IMG/VR virus record: IMGVR_UViG_3300045999_008996
Span: 124,001 to 188,000 of that record
Length of the DNA stretch: 64,000 nt
Reading direction: 5' to 3' (one strand)
In this document: positions 54,448-61,318 of the stretch, piece after piece
How positions within the stretch are numbered: position 1 is the first letter of the stretch
Layout: each line of letters starts with the position of its first letter
Translations under genes and position numbers: made by a program
Notes under the pieces: generated by a model
Seen by the model: only the letters and a program-made list of their open reading frames with translations
Told to the model about the DNA's origin: nothing
Database searches by the model: none

Positions 54448-54454
54448 AAGTTAT

Positions 54455-54526
54455 TCAGGCTCGCCACCAATTCTTTGACTGGAAATTGGAAACCAGGCGG
54501 GAGAGAGTCCCATCCGCACCAGCAAG
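54455..54526 (-). ncRNA. wcaG-type structured RNA upstream of the epimerase
   Basis: GGTGCGGATGGGA-CTCTC-TCCCGCCTGG..CCAG..GGTGGCGAGCC; resembles the cyanophage wcaG motif (from memory) and sits in the expected context. Confidence 0.6.
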
Positions 54527-54531
54527 AATTT

Positions 54532-55095
54532 TTATTGTGCCTTATCTTGCGGGCACCAGGAAGACCATTTTTTAGATTTGCTATAAATTCTATTAGCAAC
54601 TTCCATTTTAGTCATATTATAGTGTTCCATAATAGATTGGATACCAACATACTCTTTACCATCAACTATAAAAATTTTTTTTGAGGGTTTAACAAAATTT
54701 AAAATTCTTTTATTTCTTTCTTCTTCAGAAAGAGAATCCCAATGCTTTTTTACAGAGTGTTTGATATTATCTTTATGTTCTTCAGTAATGACTTGTAAAG
54801 GTCTAACTTTTTTTAGTTTTTTGCTAATTTTTAGTTTATGTTCTTCACTTAATGGAGTTCTTCCTTTACTTCCACCACTTTTTCTGTTTAAAAGATTATC
54901 TAATATTGATATTAGATATTTTTCGTGTTTTAATGCATCCTCTTCAGAAAGGTTTTTCTTCAAAAATAATATTTTATCTTTGGTGGGTCTTGGAACATTA
55001 TGATTTTTATGAAATGCTCTACGACCAGTTCCCTTTCCTATGTAATATGGTGTTCCATTTTCACGAAGATATGCATATGTGTAATAGGTCTTCAT
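54532..55095 (-). CDS. GIY-YIG homing endonuclease with NUMOD3
   Basis: YYTYAY..YYIGKG..R..E..LI..N; LSEEHKLKISK. Confidence 0.85.
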   Translation of the reverse strand: MKTYYTYAYLRENGTPYYIGKGTGRRAFHKNHNVPRPTKDKILFLKKNLSEEDALKHEKYLISILDNLLNRKSGGSKGRTPLSEEHKLKISKKLKKVRPLQVITEEHKDNIKHSVKKHWDSLSEEERNKRILNFVKPSKKIFIVDGKEYVGIQSIMEHYNMTKMEVANRIYSKSKKWSSWCPQDKAQ

Positions 55096-58440: not shown

Positions 58441-58555
58441 CGGTTCGTCCCCGTGATACTACTATATACTAATCACAGGTATTTCGATGTCAACTTTTTG
58501 TGTTCATATCGTAACACTGTTGAAAAAATTATTAAATTTGTAACTATTCTTAAAA

Positions 58556-58641
58556 CGGAAGCGGTAGGATTTGAACCCACGAACGCTATTAACGTTGGTT
58601 GTTTTCAAGACAACTGCCATAAACCACTCGGCCACGCTTCC
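58556..58641 (-). tRNA. trnS: tRNA-Ser(UGA)
   Basis: GGAAGCG..CGCTTCC-G; CT-TGA-AA; long variable arm. Confidence 0.95.
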
Positions 58642-58651
58642 AGTAGAAGGT

Positions 58652-58903
58652 TCAACGAACCTCAAAATCCAATCGTTTTACTTTACGTTGGCGTCTTGCT
58701 TCTTGAAAAGCAAGATCTTGCGAAGAAAGAACATTTGATTTTTGTTCTTTCTGGATAGAGTTTAACATAACAATGCGAGATAAGTCAAGTGCTGATATCT
58801 TATCTCCACGAATTGTTGCCATATTAGGACAACCACAGGTCACCGTTTTTGAATGATGTCCTGTTATTTCCTTATTACAATCTTTGCATCTTATTGAAAT
58901 CAT
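58652..58903 (-). CDS. Putative Zn-binding hypothetical protein
   Basis: CKDC..CGCPN. Confidence 0.65.
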   Translation of the reverse strand: MISIRCKDCNKEITGHHSKTVTCGCPNMATIRGDKISALDLSRIVMLNSIQKEQKSNVLSSQDLAFQEARRQRKVKRLDFEVR

Positions 58904-58918
58904 GATTCTTCATCCTAT

Positions 58919-59353
58919 TCATTGCAGGTGTGCTCTTAACTGCCAAACAAACTTACCATGAGATTCCATTAAATCTTGAACTAAATTTGCTGTAGCATAT
59001 GACTTTTGATTTTCAGATTCTTCCGAAATCTCTACCATTAAATCACAAAACTTGGTATTGTTATCAAGAAGCTCTTGAAGCATTTCTTTTGCTCCAGTTG
59101 AACTTGCTGCCTCTTTGATTTGAGTTACCTCAAGCATTCTAGAAAGAGAACTGAGAGGTTTTACATTCAAATAACGCATATGTTCCGAAAGACGATCAAT
59201 CTCTTCAAACATAGTTTCATACTGACCGCCAAAGAGTTGATGAAGTTGAGTGAAGTCTTCACCTACAACATTCCAATGAAATGCCCAAGTTTTATGGAAT
59301 AAAACAAAAAGCGATGACTGTGCATCACTCAAGAGTTTATAAAGTTTTTCCAT
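58919..59353 (-). CDS. dps: Dps ferritin-like DNA-protecting protein
   Basis: HWNVVG.DF..LH..F..QY..E.ID..SE..K..W.L; start re-assigned to MEKLY (track extension overlaps tRNAs). Confidence 0.9.
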   Translation of the reverse strand: MEKLYKLLSDAQSSLFVLFHKTWAFHWNVVGEDFTQLHQLFGGQYETMFEEIDRLSEHMRYLNVKPLSSLSRMLEVTQIKEAASSTGAKEMLQELLDNNTKFCDLMVEISEESENQKSYATANLVQDLMESHGKFVWQLRAHLQ

Positions 59354-59381
59354 TATACTCTTTTTATTTTTATTTATCAAG

Positions 59382-59454
59382 TGGGCAAAGAGGGATTCGA
59401 ACCCCCGACATCCTCCGTGTAAAGGAGACGCTACTACCGCTGAGCTATTTGCCC
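59382..59454 (-). tRNA. trnV: tRNA-Val(UAC)
   Basis: GGGCAAA..TTTGCCC-A; TT-TAC-AC. Confidence 0.95.
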
Positions 59455-59529
59455 TGGCTCCACAACCTGGATTCGAACCAGGGACCAAGTGATTAACAGT
59501 CACCGACTCTACCGCTGAGCTATTGTGGA
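59455..59529 (-). tRNA. trnN: tRNA-Asn(GUU), CCA encoded
   Basis: TCCACAA..TTGTGGA-G-CCA; CT-GTT-AA. Confidence 0.95.
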
Positions 59530-59533
59530 ATGA

Positions 59534-59603
59534 AGGAAGTTACTGGACTTACACCAGTTACGAGGGCATTGTCTGCTTGTCTTGATTCTTTGACTTAACT
59601 TCC
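59534..59603 (-). ncRNA. tRNA-like RNA with collapsed anticodon arm
   Basis: Perfect 7-bp acceptor GGAAGTT/AACTTCC, 5-bp T stem ACTGG/CCAGT with TGTAAGT loop, 3-bp D stem; no canonical anticodon stem. Confidence 0.55.
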
Positions 59604-59643
59604 TTTGGCGTCTTTCTATGCTATCTGCATAACGACTACCAAG

Positions 59644-59715
59644 AGCGAAAGACGAGATTCGAACTCGCAACAACCTGCTTGGAAGGCAGGGACTCTACCG
59701 TTGAGTTACTTTCGC
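59644..59715 (-). tRNA. trnG: tRNA-Gly(UCC)
   Basis: GCGAAAG..CTTTCGC-T; CT-TCC-AA. Confidence 0.95.
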
Positions 59716-59754
59716 AATGAGACAATCATAAACTATTTTAGTTTGATTGTCAAG

Positions 59755-59836
59755 TGTCGATGAGAGGACTTGAACCTCCACAGATTAATCTACTGGAACC
59801 TAAACCCAGCGCGTCTACCAATTCCGCCACATCGAC
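59755..59836 (-). tRNA. trnL: tRNA-Leu(UAG)
   Basis: GTCGATG..CATCGAC-A; TT-TAG-GT; variable arm present. Confidence 0.95.
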
Positions 59837-59930
59837 TTGATGGAGTAAGTATGATATACCTCATAAGGATATAACAGTGACTTACCCTCTATCATTTTAT
59901 ATATTAACAGACTCAAAAGAATCTGTCAAG

Positions 59931-60003
59931 CGTCCTTTGAGAGATTCGAACTCCCGCACATAGGTTCGTAGCCTACTGCTCTATTCCACTGAGCTAAAAG
60001 GAC
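59931..60003 (-). tRNA. trnR: tRNA-Arg(ACG)
   Basis: GTCCTTT..AAAGGAC-G; CT-ACG-AA. Confidence 0.95.
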
Positions 60004-60006
60004 AAG

Positions 60007-60078
60007 TTCTGAGGGTAGGATTCGAACCCACGAATGGCGGGACCAAAACCCGCTGCCTTACCGCTTGGCGACCTCAGA
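60007..60078 (-). tRNA. trnQ: tRNA-Gln(UUG)
   Basis: TCTGAGG..CCTCAGA-A; TT-TTG-GT. Confidence 0.95.
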
Positions 60079-60150
60079 AGCCCTCAATTGGATTTGAACC
60101 AACGACCTACTCATTACTAGTGAGTTGCTCTACCACTGAGCTATAAGGGC
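60079..60150 (-). tRNA. trnT: tRNA-Thr(AGU)
   Basis: GCCCTTA..TGAGGGC-T; ACTCA-CT-AGT-AA-TGAGT. Confidence 0.9.
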
Positions 60151-60152
60151 GG

Positions 60153-60223
60153 GGTGCCGTGAGGGAATCGAACCCTCATATAGAGAACCACAATCTCCTG
60201 TCTTACCATTAGACTAACGACAC
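60153..60223 (-). tRNA. trnH: tRNA-His(GUG)
   Basis: GTGTCGT..ACGGCAC-C; TT-GTG-GT. Confidence 0.9.
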
Positions 60224-60224
60224 A

Positions 60225-60298
60225 AGGCAGTAGATAGATTTGAACTATCGACCATAGGCATATGAGACCCGTGCTCTGCCAGACTGAGCTATACTGCC
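60225..60298 (-). tRNA. trnM: tRNA-Met(CAU), elongator type, weak anticodon stem
   Basis: GGCAGTA..TACTGCC-T; CT-CAT-AT. Confidence 0.8.
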
Positions 60299-60300
60299 AA

Positions 60301-60389
60301 CGGAAGTGGTTGGATTCGAACCAACGGATGCCTATAAAGACATCGGCGGATTAGCAATCCACTGCATTAGACCTCTCTGCCACACTTCC
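60301..60389 (-). tRNA. trnS: tRNA-Ser(GCU)
   Basis: GGAAGTG..CACTTCC-G; TT-GCT-AA; long arm. Confidence 0.95.
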
Positions 60390-60391
60390 AA

Positions 60392-60465
60392 TAGGAATGG
60401 TGAGATTCGAACTCACGACCACACGATTATCAGTCGTGTACTCTAACCAACTGAGCTACATTCCT
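60392..60465 (-). tRNA. trnI: tRNA-Ile(GAU)
   Basis: AGGAATG..CATTCCT-A; CT-GAT-AA. Confidence 0.95.
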
Positions 60466-60466
60466 G

Positions 60467-60541
60467 TGGTATTCCTAACGGGATTCGAACCCGTGCTGCC
60501 ACCTTGAAAGGGTGGTGACCTAACCGCTAGTCGATAGGAAC
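60467..60541 (-). tRNA. trnE: tRNA-Glu(UUC), CCA encoded
   Basis: GTTCCTA..TAGGAAT-A-CCA; CT-TTC-AA. Confidence 0.95.
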
Positions 60542-60589
60542 TTAATGCTGACGGCATTCTGGATTATCAGCTCCAGCGCAAATCAGCAA

Positions 60590-60661
60590 CGACTCTAACG
60601 GGATTTGAACCCGTGATACTACCGTGACAGGGTAGCGTGATAACCGCTTCACTATAGAGTC
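60590..60661 (-). tRNA. trnD: tRNA-Asp(GUC)
   Basis: GACTCTA..TAGAGTC-G; CT-GTC-AC. Confidence 0.95.
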
Positions 60662-60665
60662 AAGG

Positions 60666-60747
60666 TGGGAGGAGCAGGATTCGAACCTGCGAAGGTAGAA
60701 CCGTCTGATTTACAGTCAGATTCCTTTAGCCACTCGGAAATCCTCCC
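60666..60747 (-). tRNA. trnY: tRNA-Tyr(GUA)
   Basis: GGGAGGA..TCCTCCC-A; CT-GTA-AA; variable arm. Confidence 0.95.
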
Positions 60748-60750
60748 AGA

Positions 60751-60823
60751 TGGGTATGGTCGGGTTCGAACCGACGACTTACAGGTTAAAAGCCCGCTAC
60801 TCTACCAACTGAGTTACATACCC
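60751..60823 (-). tRNA. trnK: tRNA-Lys(UUU)
   Basis: GGGTATG..CATACCC-A; CT-TTT-AA. Confidence 0.95.
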
Positions 60824-60939
60824 TTAGAATTAAATTGTCAAGGTTCGGGGTGTGGTCTCTCTCGACCACTTGATTAGAATACCACCTTTTGGACTCTGGG
60901 GGGAGATTGGTGGACACTTAGGAAACTGGTCCAAGCAAC

Positions 60940-60977
60940 AAAAAAGGGGAGGAAACTTTTGGTTTCTCTCCCCTCTA
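60940..60977 (-). terminator. Terminator downstream of tRNA-Arg(UCU) and the long hairpin
   Basis: GGGGAGAGAAACC..TTTCCTCCCC followed by T5. Confidence 0.6.
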
Positions 60978-61004
60978 TTTGCTTTTATGGATTGCATATT
61001 ACAT

Positions 61005-61100
61005 ATGTCTTTCCATTTCAGCAAACAGGGGATTACCCTCAATATGCCAATCACGGCAATCGAGAGTACTAATCTGTTTGGTGGTGATTTGGAAAGACAT
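61005..61100 (-). ncRNA. Candidate rod-shaped ncRNA (~96 nt)
   Basis: Nested inverted repeats ATGTCTTTCCA/TGGAAAGACAT, CAAACAG/CTGTTTG, ATTA/TAAT, CTC/GAG, TGCC/GGCA. Confidence 0.5.
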
Positions 61101-61152
61101 TGTTTTCGACCTAAGTGTTTTTATTTATAAGACTTTTATTTAAAAAGTCTAA

Positions 61153-61226
61153 CGGGTTAGGAGGGACTCGAACCCCCGACCAATTCATTAGAAGTGAATT
61201 GCTCTATCCATCTGAGCTACTAACCC
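61153..61226 (-). tRNA. trnR: tRNA-Arg(UCU)
   Basis: GGGTTAG..CTAACCC-G; CT-TCT-AA. Confidence 0.95.
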
Positions 61227-61318
61227 AAGAGACCTCTCTGTTTGTGCTTCTATGAGAGGCATGAGAGGGGTGAGACTTATATGAGGTTTGGACCCTCACT
61301 GCTCATATGATTATTGTA

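What the first reader, a model, noticed from the sequence alone, without database searches (positions are those of the whole stretch)
59531..59643. tRNA-mimic RNA hidden between tRNA-Gly and tRNA-Asn
Seen: perfect acceptor (7 bp), T (5 bp) and D (3 bp) stems with correct spacing, but a TGTAAGT T-loop, only a 3-bp/5-nt anticodon hairpin (GCA-GACAA-TGC) and a 3' TCA; it is preceded by a separate ~38-nt hairpin. Known: the T4 tRNA cluster encodes two stable non-tRNA species (RNA C and D) of unknown function. Inference: compensatory pairing in three stems suggests a selected tRNA-shaped ncRNA, possibly a decoy for host tRNases or synthetases, or an RNase P-processed small RNA.
Basis: partly seen in the sequence, partly recalled or inferred. 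Interest (0 to 1): 0.6.

Follow-up and report, generated by a model that had tools for sequence, protein, structure and literature searches.

The report
Anticodon-less tRNA look-alike in cyanophage
Inside the tRNA gene cluster of a freshwater cyanophage sits a 70-base gene for an RNA that folds like a tRNA but has a tiny capped stub where the anticodon should be; it belongs to a strongly conserved family I could not find described, and it most likely imitates a tRNA rather than decoding.

Summary
On the minus strand, between tRNA-Gly(UCC) and tRNA-Asn(GUU), lie a 38-nt hairpin (59605-59642) and a 70-nt cloverleaf (59534-59603). The cloverleaf has a 7-bp acceptor stem, a 3-bp D stem, a 3-bp stem capped by GACAA instead of an anticodon arm, and a 5-bp T stem with loop UGUAAGU. 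ARAGORN and Rfam do not call it a tRNA.

It is not a decaying pseudogene. I found 64 copies (15 distinct) in viral contigs. They are about 96% identical, while the flanking genuine tRNAs are only 68-73% identical. A covariance model found diverged relatives with canonical elbows. Across 42 distinct members, 97.6% of stem positions pair, all four helices covary, and the loop is always GAYAA. A D-loop/T-loop change (G-C to A-U) also looks compensatory.

Contigs from three metatranscriptomes cover it. The "3' TCA" is a non-conserved spacer. The hairpin is a separate, widespread, covarying motif that usually starts just after a tRNA. T4 rnaC also holds a tRNA-like domain and is the closest analogue, not a clear homologue.

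The most likely mechanism is a non-decoding tRNA mimic matured by tRNA-processing enzymes. The decoy role is inferred, not shown.

The parts
59725..59753 (-). Sigma-70-like promoter TTGACA-17-TATGAT, ending about 9 nt before tRNA-Gly. It would drive the unit tRNA-Gly, hairpin, tRNA-like RNA, tRNA-Asn, tRNA-Val.
   Evidence: 11 of 12 consensus matches. The same sequence stands before tRNA-Gly in the related array L353. This is a consensus match only; no start site is mapped.
59644..59715 (-). tRNA-Gly(UCC), a genuine tRNA with no encoded CCA. It is the upstream neighbour.
   Evidence: Rfam RF00005 at 67.7 bits and ARAGORN.
59605..59642 (-). Hairpin 1, a 'tRNA-trailer hairpin': 5-bp outer stem, bulged A, 3-bp GUC/GAC, internal loop G/AAA, 6-bp apical stem, loop AGAUA. 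It is an independent conserved module.
   Evidence: MFE -11.9 kcal/mol, z -4.4. At least 119 IMG/VR contigs carry it. Across 63 distinct copies, 95.5% of cells pair and the covariation score is 0.44 against 0.16 for shuffles, 0 of 500. It nearly always starts 0-2 nt after a tRNA of varied identity. This genome has one copy. There is no Rfam match.
59534..59603 (-). The tRNA-like RNA gene, 70 nt including the discriminator U at 59534. It is the A-type of a 'GAYAA-stub' tRNA-like family.
   Evidence: The cloverleaf is the MFE fold. It scores 87.2 bits on family model R2 and is the only member in the window and in the 222.6-kb genome. 64 copies, 15 distinct, 96% column identity. Covered by metatranscriptome contigs.
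59566..59576 (-). The stub that replaces the anticodon arm: 3-bp stem GCA/UGC capped by the pentaloop GACAA.
   Evidence: The loop is GACAA in 33 and GAUAA in 8 of 42 distinct family members. The 3-bp stem covaries: GCA/UGC, GUG/CAC, GGA/UCC, CCC/GGG, CCU/AGG.
59542..59558 (-). T arm: ACUGG-UGUAAGU-CCAGU. The loop keeps U54 and A58 but has G55 and U56 instead of the canonical U55 and C56.
   Evidence: The loop type goes together with the D-loop type across the family.
59579..59594 (-). D arm: GUC-AAAGAAUCAA-GAC. The loop lacks the canonical GG.
   Evidence: D loops with GG go with T loops reading UUCGA. D loops with AA or GA go with T loops having U at position 56.
59530..59533 (-). 4-nt spacer UCAU between the discriminator and the first base of tRNA-Asn.
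   Evidence: Not conserved in sequence. It is 3-5 nt long in 40 of 64 copies.
59458..59529 (-). tRNA-Asn(GUU), a genuine tRNA and the downstream neighbour.
   Evidence: Rfam at 64.8 bits and ARAGORN.

Best explanation
Window 59534-59603 (minus strand) encodes a non-decoding tRNA mimic. It is a 70-nt RNA with a tRNA acceptor/T-arm helix and a D-loop/T-loop elbow. Its anticodon arm is replaced by a 3-bp stub capped with a GAYAA pentaloop.

Shown:
- The fold is real and under strong purifying selection.
- It belongs to a family spread through T4-like cyanophage genomes.
- The sequence occurs in RNA libraries.

Inferred:
- It is co-transcribed with tRNA-Gly, tRNA-Asn and tRNA-Val from the promoter-like site at 59753.
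- It is cut out by the tRNA enzymes. RNase P would cut at its G1 and at the start of tRNA-Asn 5 nt downstream; RNase Z or exonucleases would trim the tail; the CCA-adding enzyme would add CCA.
- It folds into an L shape.
- It acts in trans by occupying a protein that reads the tRNA body (acceptor end or elbow) without needing an anticodon. The most likely role is a decoy or competitor for a host tRNA-directed factor during infection.

It cannot read codons.
For: 1. Structure. The cloverleaf is the MFE fold. In 15 sequences spanning three subtypes, 98.9% of cells pair and 15 of 18 pairs change on both sides; the covariation score is 0.64 against 0.21 for shuffles, 0 of 500. In 42 distinct members, 97.6% of cells pair.

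2. Elbow. D-loop and T-loop types go together. UAUUGGUAAG goes with UUCGAUU, and UAUUGAUAAG goes with UUUGAUU. AAAGGGNAA goes with UUCGAxU, and AAAGAAUCRA goes with UGUAAGU. This is as expected if the G19-C56 tertiary pair became A19-U56.

3. Selection. In arrays found through the hairpin, independently of the module, module identity is 0.963. tRNA-Gly is 0.68 and tRNA-Asn 0.73 (similar). The module keeps its sequence with four different upstream partners and without hairpin 1.

4. RNA strand. G-C to G-U changes and three compensatory acceptor pairs (L150) fit only the tRNA-sense strand.

5. tRNA-like gene placement. It has a 7-bp acceptor stem and a discriminator, no encoded CCA (like the real tRNAs here), and the next tRNA follows 3-5 nt downstream. 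Genuine tRNAs hit the family model at up to 41 bits.

6. Not a decoder. The stub has 3 bp and a 5-nt loop. ARAGORN makes no call even at relaxed thresholds, and there is no RF00005 hit at E<=10.

7. Expression. Contigs from three metatranscriptomes cover it: X15 59563-59749, X16 59534-59592, X17 59527-59634 at depth 194.

8. Independent gene. Two B-type relatives (L091, L092) have no tRNA directly beside them. L092 has a TTGACA-17-TATAGT site 10 nt upstream by my own reading, though that stretch lies inside or next to an Rfam wcaG RNA match.

9. Context. The same arrays carry abiF-motif RNAs, so they hold other small non-tRNA RNAs too.
Against: - There are no data on RNA ends, CCA addition, aminoacylation or abundance. 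The runs are contigs only, and DNA carry-over into RNA libraries is not excluded.
- No binding partner is known, and no gene is consistently linked to the family.
- Within the window's own subtype, three stems never vary. Part of its uniformity could therefore reflect recent horizontal spread rather than selection.
- The discriminator base varies across the family (U 23, A 11, C 7, G 1). This argues against one fixed aminoacyl-tRNA synthetase or one enzyme that reads the discriminator.
- The decoy idea rests on analogy only.
Confidence: 0.5

Rival explanations
1. Processing punctuation only. The tRNA shape serves in cis as an entry site for RNase P and RNase Z, so that the neighbouring tRNAs and hairpin 1 are cut apart correctly. 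The released RNA has no function of its own.
For: It sits in a tight tRNA array, 3-5 nt before tRNA-Asn in 40 of 64 copies and 37-40 nt after tRNA-Gly in 53. tRNAs in this cluster abut one another at 0-2 nt, so RNase P sites define most 3' ends.
Against: A mere cleavage signal should tolerate compensatory change as the real tRNAs do. Yet loops and stems are nearly invariant (96% against about 70% for the neighbours). The GAYAA loop, which RNase P and RNase Z should not need, is the most conserved feature of the whole family. B-type members occur without a directly adjoining tRNA (L091, L092). tRNA-Asn would supply the RNase P site anyway.
Confidence: 0.2
2. RNA-RNA pairing device. The exposed GAY of the pentaloop is an Asp codon. 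It would kiss the GUC anticodon of tRNA-Asp, or another complementary loop, and so sequester, deliver or sense that tRNA.
For: The only variable loop position is Y, and GAC and GAU are synonymous Asp codons; both would pair with a G34 or Q34 anticodon. The two As after it never vary. The phage encodes its own tRNA-Asp(GUC).
Against: A 5-nt loop on a 3-bp stem is a poor kissing partner. Other readings of the same loop are equally possible, such as a GNRA-like fold with the pyrimidine flipped out, or YAA. No tool here can test it.
Confidence: 0.08
3. Amino-acid carrier for a non-ribosomal reaction. The RNA would be charged by a synthetase that reads only the acceptor end and would donate the residue to some transferase.
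For: It has an intact acceptor/T-arm helix and a discriminator. The missing anticodon would keep it off the ribosome.
Against: The discriminator and the acceptor pairs vary freely across the family. There is no G3-U70, no long variable arm and no G-1. No transferase gene is linked to it.
Confidence: 0.07
4. Decaying tRNA pseudogene or a chance fold, with no function.
For: It is tRNA-derived in shape and sits among tRNAs. tRNA finders reject it.
Against: It is far better conserved than the functional tRNAs on either side. All four helices covary across subtypes. The replacement loop is invariant. It is present in RNA libraries.
Confidence: 0.03
5. A DNA-level element, such as a recombination or homing site, or a short peptide gene on the plus strand, rather than an RNA.
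For: Near-invariance of every base. A 22-codon frame starts at ATG 59531 on the plus strand (my reading of the sequence).
Against: The ATG is lost in most copies, whose tails read TATATT, TTTATT and similar. The G-U pairs and compensatory changes fit the tRNA-sense RNA only. Diverged subtypes keep the fold, not the sequence.
Confidence: 0.02

Closest known systems
Canonical tRNA (Rfam RF00005)
   Same: 7-bp acceptor stem plus discriminator, a 2-nt linker, a D arm, a 5-bp T stem with a 7-nt loop keeping U54 and A58, no encoded CCA like its neighbours, and a place inside a tRNA array. Real tRNAs score up to 41 bits on the family model.
   Different: There is no 5-bp/7-nt anticodon arm; a 3-bp stem with a GACAA loop stands in its place. 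It has A8 instead of U8, no GG in the D loop, and a T loop reading UGUAAGU. ARAGORN does not call it even at relaxed thresholds, and it gets no RF00005 hit at E<=10.
Phage T4 species 1 RNA (rnaC), the small stable RNA of the T4 tRNA cluster
   Same: It is a non-tRNA RNA encoded next to tRNAs in a T4-like phage. Its 3' 92 nt match the family model over all 70 positions (21.8 bits, E 3e-5). That score lies within the range of T4's own tRNAs (8-35 bits). The match comprises a 7-bp acceptor-like stem CGGAACG/CGUUUCG, a T arm CCGGG-UUCGAAU-CCCGG, and a non-anticodon hairpin with loop CGUCAA. A 5' extension of about 46 nt precedes it, as hairpin 1 precedes the module here. From my own knowledge, its function is unknown.
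   Different: It is 139 nt long, with a 35-nt insertion in the D region, an 8-bp stem with a 6-nt loop instead of a 3-bp stem with GAYAA, and no sequence likeness outside the T arm. Homology is not shown. rnaD does not match.
tRNA-like domains of tmRNA and of bacterial Y-RNA-like YrlA
   Same: They are tRNA-shaped bodies (acceptor stem, T arm, elbow) without a decoding anticodon arm, and they work by mimicry (my own knowledge).
   Different: Here there is no tag reading frame, no pseudoknots, and no long Ro-binding helix. ARAGORN finds no tmRNA, and Rfam gives no tmRNA or Y-RNA match at E<=10. This is a free-standing 70-nt cloverleaf.
Viral or cellular tRNA-like small RNAs cut out by tRNA enzymes (murid herpesvirus 68 vtRNAs, MALAT1 mascRNA)
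   Same: They are tRNA-like folds with a shortened anticodon arm, released by RNase P and/or RNase Z, and they are not used in decoding (my own knowledge).
   Different: They are eukaryotic or animal-virus systems with unrelated sequences. The mascRNA model matched a genuine tRNA in the window only weakly (19.4 bits) and did not match this element.
P22 boxB GACAA pentaloop (GNRA-like fold)
   Same: The same pentaloop sequence, GACAA, caps a short stem. In boxB it folds like a GNRA tetraloop with one base flipped out and is read by a peptide (my own knowledge). In this family the only variable loop base is the pyrimidine.
   Different: The context is entirely different and no N-like protein is known here. 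This is a resemblance recalled from memory, not a test.

Membership tests
Canonical tRNA (RF00005) | 7-bp acceptor stem with an unpaired discriminator | tested here: met
   GGAAGUU/AACUUCC plus U. The stem covaries across the family.
Canonical tRNA (RF00005) | 5-bp anticodon stem with a 7-nt loop (U33, anticodon 34-36) | tested here: not met
   The stem has 3 bp and the loop, GACAA, has 5 nt. This holds in all 42 distinct family members, except that one (L097) aligns with a wider loop, GGACAAC.
Canonical tRNA (RF00005) | D loop with G18 G19 and a T loop reading U54-U55-C56-R57-A58 | tested here: not met
   The D loop is AAAGAAUCAA and the T loop is UGUAAGU; only U54, R57 and A58 are kept. Relatives of the B and C types do have the canonical loops.
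Canonical tRNA (RF00005) | Recognised by tRNA models or finders | tested here: not met
   No ARAGORN call at default thresholds or at -ps70. No RF00005 hit at E<=10.
T4 small stable RNAs (rnaC, rnaD) | Encoded within the tRNA cluster of a T4-like phage, on the tRNA strand | tested here: met
   It lies between tRNA-Gly and tRNA-Asn on the minus strand, as do all 21 tRNAs. For T4.
T4 small stable RNAs (rnaC, rnaD) | Sequence or structure homology to rnaC or rnaD | tested here: inconclusive
   The 3' domain of rnaC matches model R2 at 21.8 bits, as a generic tRNA-like fold. There is no GAYAA stub and no likeness outside the T arm. rnaD gives no match.
T4 small stable RNAs (rnaC, rnaD) | Accumulates as a stable, processed small RNA in infected cells | not testable with these tools
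   Only assembled contigs of metatranscriptomes were available.
tmRNA | tRNA-like domain plus a tag reading frame and pseudoknots | tested here: not met
   ARAGORN finds no tmRNA, and no Rfam tmRNA match appears at E<=10.
GAYAA-stub tRNA-like RNAs of cyanomyoviruses (family defined here) | 7-bp acceptor stem, 3-4-bp D stem, 3-bp stem with a GAYAA pentaloop in place of the anticodon arm, 7-11-nt variable region, 5-bp T stem, about 70-75 nt in all | tested here: met
   87.2 bits on R2, the top score. Aligned with 41 other distinct members.
GAYAA-stub tRNA-like RNAs of cyanomyoviruses (family defined here) | [quoted passage not shown] | tested here: met
   Every member checked for context lies in a cyanophage-like tRNA array or beside cyanophage genes or RNA motifs. 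The exact A-type pattern occurs in 185,579 species genomes only on one 802-bp contig, which carries the same phage array. This was tested for the A-type only.

The most novel reading that the evidence does not exclude
The GAYAA-stub tRNA-like RNAs, perhaps together with T4 species 1 RNA, would be a class of phage-encoded tRNA-body decoys. They would be processed and CCA-tailed like tRNAs but unable to decode. They would soak up or mis-direct a host factor that attacks or senses tRNAs through the acceptor end or elbow. Candidates are tRNA-directed abortive-infection toxins, nucleotidyltransferase or acetyltransferase toxins, and acceptor-stem nucleases. The GNRA-like GAYAA cap would be the handle that makes them better ligands than real tRNAs. 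On this reading phage tRNA arrays are counter-defence islands that hold decoys as well as spare tRNAs.
Probability: 0.15. Interest if true: 0.85.

Novelty: new variant of a known kind. Interest (0 to 1): 0.66.

Why it matters
Phage tRNA clusters are usually read as codon-usage aids or as spare parts against host anticodon nucleases. This element is a cluster-encoded RNA that keeps the tRNA body but deletes the decoding part, and it is held more constant than the real tRNAs beside it. That points to a second, non-translational use of the tRNA shape by T4-like phages.

It also gives the 50-year-old puzzle of the T4 species 1 and 2 RNAs a large comparative data set. There are now dozens of diverged relatives with one invariant loop, and two cultured cyanophages (S-SZBM1 and DSL-LC03) carry a member that can be deleted and assayed.

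On the practical side, the C-type members are called tRNA-Leu(CAA) by ARAGORN and scrape past the Rfam tRNA threshold. Published counts of tRNA genes in cyanophages may therefore include non-decoding mimics.

Tried and rejected
- **Rfam.** A search at E<=10 over 59300-59950 gave nothing in the 113 nt.
- **ARAGORN.** Relaxed and mitochondrial settings gave no sense-strand call, only spurious antisense calls at -ps80.
- **blastn against cultured phages.** Searches of 50,697 cultured-phage records with the 113-mer, the 70-mer and a B-type member matched only the hairpin part.
- **Plus-strand peptide.** The 22-codon frame from ATG 59531 is rejected because the ATG is not conserved.
- **'3' TCA as a CCA mimic.'** Rejected as not conserved.
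- **9-bp acceptor stem of the MFE fold.** Rejected because the flanking base varies.
- **Hairpin 1 compared with the abiF RNA motif.** The sequence and shape differ.
- **Hairpin 1 and module as one obligatory unit.** Rejected because the module occurs after other elements, or directly after tRNA-Gly.
- **Linked protein genes near stand-alone relatives.** PHROGs gave no consistent neighbour: a 2OG-Fe(II) oxygenase, CobS/CobT-like genes and a sugar epimerase.
- **Literature.** Searches for cyanophage tRNA-like RNAs, pseudo-tRNAs, anticodon-less tRNA-like RNAs and decoys found no description of this family.
- **Read depth as a measure of expression.** Not usable, because only contigs from mixed populations were available.
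- **A covariation between D-loop position 21 and variable positions 42-44.** The two lineages differ there, but I could not fit it to a base pair.

Full report
**Setting.** The window is part of an uncultivated virus genome of 222,563 bp with direct terminal repeats (window = bases 124001-188000). It is a T4-like cyanophage. It carries PhotoRC-II, wcaG and abiF RNA motifs and 21 tRNA genes, all on the minus strand. It also has typical cyanomyovirus genes such as 6-phosphogluconate dehydrogenase. Its nearest cultured relatives by DNA are Kyanoviridae from lakes and estuaries. Near-identical DNA occurs in lake, freshwater, wetland and river metagenomes.

**The observation.**
- A 38-nt hairpin occupies 59605-59642.
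- One A follows it (59604).
- A 70-nt cloverleaf occupies 59534-59603.

The cloverleaf has a 7-bp acceptor stem, the linker AA, a 3-bp D stem with a 10-nt loop, the stub GCA-GACAA-UGC, 7 variable bases, a 5-bp T stem with loop UGUAAGU, and a discriminator U. Then come UCAU and tRNA-Asn.

The fold of the 113-mer has z = -4.4 (0 of 200 shuffles as good). The plus strand folds less well (z = -2.4). No tRNA finder or Rfam model reports the element, even at E<=10 or at relaxed ARAGORN thresholds.

**Two separate modules.** blastn against cultured phages matched only the hairpin. A degenerate pattern for the hairpin found at least 119 viral contigs.

In these contigs the hairpin nearly always begins 0-2 nt after the 3' end of a tRNA. 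The tRNA may be Gly, Ser, Thr, Leu, Arg, Ile, Asp, Met, Asn or Pro. What follows is either the next tRNA or one of about ten different second modules. A few copies sit instead behind a promoter-like site in a 5' leader, for example in phage S-B05.

Across 63 distinct copies, 95.5% of stem cells pair. The outer stem, the GUC/GAC to CUC/GAG step and the apical UAUGC/GCAUA to UAGGC/GCCUA step all covary. It has no Rfam match and differs from the abiF hairpin. I treat it as an independent 'tRNA-trailer hairpin' of unknown function. Its fixed position, about 2 nt after the discriminator, is where the next tRNA's acceptor stem stands in tightly packed arrays. This suggests a role in end formation or protection, but that is inference only.

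**The tRNA-shaped module: close copies.** Two exact-word scans found 64 copies, 15 of them distinct. The typical order is tRNA-Gly, then hairpin 1 or a variant, then the module, then tRNA-Asn 3-5 nt downstream. The module also occurs after a terminator-like hairpin, after a pseudoknot-like module, or directly after tRNA-Gly without any hairpin (L150).

The core is nearly invariant, at 96% column identity. The changes fall in two D-loop positions, the variable region, the discriminator and the tail. This is why the '3' TCA' carries no signal.
- The acceptor stem shows G-C to G-U changes.
- In L150 the acceptor stem shows three compensatory pairs.
- The D, stub and T stems never vary among these copies.

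Because the scans used words from the module itself, I repeated the comparison on arrays found through the hairpin alone. There the module is 96.3% identical (minimum 91%), while tRNA-Gly is 68% and tRNA-Asn 73% identical. A tRNA pseudogene would be the least conserved item in the array, not the most.

**Diverged relatives and covariation.** A covariance model of the close copies (R1) found diverged relatives.
- **B-type.** Examples are L011, L091, L092, L104, L299, L302 and L334. They have other acceptor, D and stub stems, a D loop AAAGGGNAA and a canonical T loop UUCGAxU.
- **C-type.** An example is L004:1264-1335. They have a fully canonical D arm and T arm. ARAGORN calls them tRNA-Leu(CAA) or an undetermined tRNA. 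Rfam scores the one I tested at 29.6 bits, just above its threshold of 29.
- **Odd-loop forms.** L047, L052, L097 and L115 have other T loops.

In 15 sequences spanning the subtypes, 98.9% of cells pair and 15 of 18 pairs change on both sides. The covariation score is 0.64 against 0.21 for shuffles (0 of 500), and slid controls give 0.05-0.13. That alignment was fitted to the model, which favours the structure. However, the same pairs are visible by eye in the raw sequences.

Among 42 distinct members, 97.6% of cells pair. The capping loop is GACAA in 33, GAUAA in 8, and aligns as GGACAAC in one. Loop types also go together. GG in the D loop goes with C56, and A at that place goes with U56. 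This appears twice independently: in C-type L002 and L008, and in the window's A-type. It is what a retained 19-56 elbow pair predicts, though I could not number the D loop with certainty.

The second model (R2) finds exactly one member in the window and in the whole genome. Genuine tRNAs score at most 41 bits, against 87 for the module.

**Distribution.** No cultured phage record has the A-type or B-type by blastn. S-SZBM1 and DSL-LC03 each have one unannotated C-type member. Among 185,579 species genomes, the exact A-type pattern occurs once. That hit is an 802-bp contig binned into a Flavobacteriaceae MAG, and it carries the same promoter, tRNA-Gly, hairpin, module and tRNA-Asn array. It is most likely a phage fragment.

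**Expression.** Four RNA-library runs were laid on 58500-61300. Contigs from three of them cover the element:
- X15: 59563-59749.
- X16: 59534-59592, depth 40.
- X17: 59527-59634, depth 194.

The X17 contig carries the commoner environmental variant (D-loop G21, variable region CUUUG) and continues into another phage's downstream sequence. These are assembled contigs. They show presence in RNA libraries but not ends, strand or level, and DNA carry-over is not excluded.

A strong sigma-70-like site (TTGACA-17-TATGAT, 59753-59725) lies just upstream of tRNA-Gly and is conserved in L353. This suggests a short Gly, hairpin, module, Asn, Val transcription unit.

**Comparison with T4.** The T4 record annotates rnaC and rnaD as small stable RNAs next to tRNA-Arg. 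Neither resembles hairpin 1. Model R2 does match the 3' 92 nt of rnaC over its full length, at 21.8 bits. This lies within the range of T4's own tRNAs (8-35 bits). The match comprises an acceptor-like stem, a canonical T arm and a non-anticodon hairpin. T4 species 1 RNA is therefore also a 5' extension followed by a tRNA-like body. That makes it the closest analogue. The score reflects a generic tRNA shape, so common descent is not shown. rnaD does not match.

**Mechanism.**

*Shown:*
- The RNA fold is conserved, covarying and tRNA-derived, and it lacks any anticodon arm.
- It stands in a tRNA operon.
- Its sequence is present in RNA libraries.

*Inferred:*
- It matures through RNase P, RNase Z and the CCA-adding enzyme. 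Its borders have the same geometry as those of the neighbouring tRNAs, which also lack an encoded CCA.
- It has an L shape with a modified elbow.
- It acts by mimicry of the tRNA body.

The invariant GAYAA cap is the family's signature. From memory, it matches the P22 boxB pentaloop, which folds like a GNRA tetraloop with the pyrimidine flipped out. That would explain why only the Y varies. Alternatively, GAY may act as an Asp-codon mimic.

I put about 0.9 on 'selected, non-decoding tRNA-like RNA', about 0.6 on processing by the tRNA enzymes, and about 0.3 on a decoy or competitor role. The combined statement is scored 0.5. The rivals are cis-only punctuation, an RNA-RNA kissing device, an amino-acid carrier, a pseudogene and a DNA element. 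They are weighed in their own section.

**Novelty.** I found no description of this family or of hairpin 1 in Rfam 15 or in the paper library. tRNA-like non-coding RNAs are a known kind. This architecture, with a cloverleaf body and a GAYAA stub, and its spread in cyanomyovirus tRNA arrays appear to be new.

Noticed in passing
window 61232-61268 (-): An abiF RNA motif (RF03085, 41.3 bits) stands 5 nt upstream of tRNA-Arg(UCU). The same motif precedes tRNAs in related arrays (L091, L104, L299, L302) and was reported once in cyanophage S-CREM1 (PMC9964418). In these phages it seems to be a regular tRNA-leader module.
   Followed up: partly
window 60553-60579 (-), between tRNA-Glu and tRNA-Asp: A recurrent small hairpin module, GCGCUGGA...CCAGAAUGCC, is also present in 21 other cyanophage tRNA-array loci (22 loci in all). 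It has no Rfam match at gathering threshold and its function is unknown.
   Followed up: partly
L001:1239-1285, L004:1232-1262, L058, L114 (related phages; not in the window): Short 'minihelix' modules follow hairpin 1 in other arrays. Each is a G-rich acceptor-like stem, sometimes with a T-arm-like hairpin, ending in an encoded GCCA. The real tRNA genes around them do not encode CCA. In L073 and L098 such a module occupies the very slot (Gly-hairpin-X-Asn) that the tRNA-like RNA occupies here.
   Followed up: partly
L003:1196-1233 (phage S-B05) and similar contigs (L054, L057, L062, L069): Hairpin 1 also occurs away from tRNAs. There it lies behind a TTGACT-17-TATAAT site in the leader of a small ORF. 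It is flanked by a repeated CGUUCAUCC whose partner GAACG lies next to the GGAG ribosome-binding site. The layout resembles a regulatory switch.
   Followed up: no
L092:1324-1431 (-) and L104:6056-6164 (+): In two contigs a B-type tRNA-like RNA lies about 46 nt downstream of a wcaG RNA motif. In the window the wcaG RNA is at 54453-54558, about 5 kb from the module.
   Followed up: no
L002:1307-1378 (S-SZBM1), L004:1264-1335 (DSL-LC03) and about 15 other contigs: ARAGORN calls C-type family members tRNA-Leu(CAA) or an undetermined tRNA with a 4-base anticodon. The one tested (L004) just passes the Rfam tRNA threshold at 29.6 bits against 29. Yet they have a 3-bp stem with a GAYAA stub and no long variable arm. 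Counts of cyanophage tRNA genes may include them.
   Followed up: partly
L017:6650-6730 and 28 other loci (not in the window): A pseudoknot-like module occurs in many arrays, for example ...GAGGGUAAGCCUCUGUUAUAUCCUUGAGGUAUAUUACGCUUACUCCAUCA. The loop GUAAGC is complementary to the downstream GCUUAC. It sometimes lies directly upstream of the tRNA-like RNA.
   Followed up: no
window 58919-59347 (-): A DNA-binding protein gene that looks Dps/ferritin-like to me (phrog_3636, 'DNA binding protein', E 3.5e-30) lies directly downstream of the tRNA-Val gene and has its own promoter-like site. A contig at depth 238 covers it in metatranscriptome run X17.
   Followed up: no
L300 (- strand; 3' half of a B-type member after tRNA-Gly): A truncated family member keeps the variable region, T arm and 3' acceptor strand. 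Its 5' half is replaced by an unrelated hairpin, so it looks like a decayed copy, in contrast to the intact ones.
   Followed up: no
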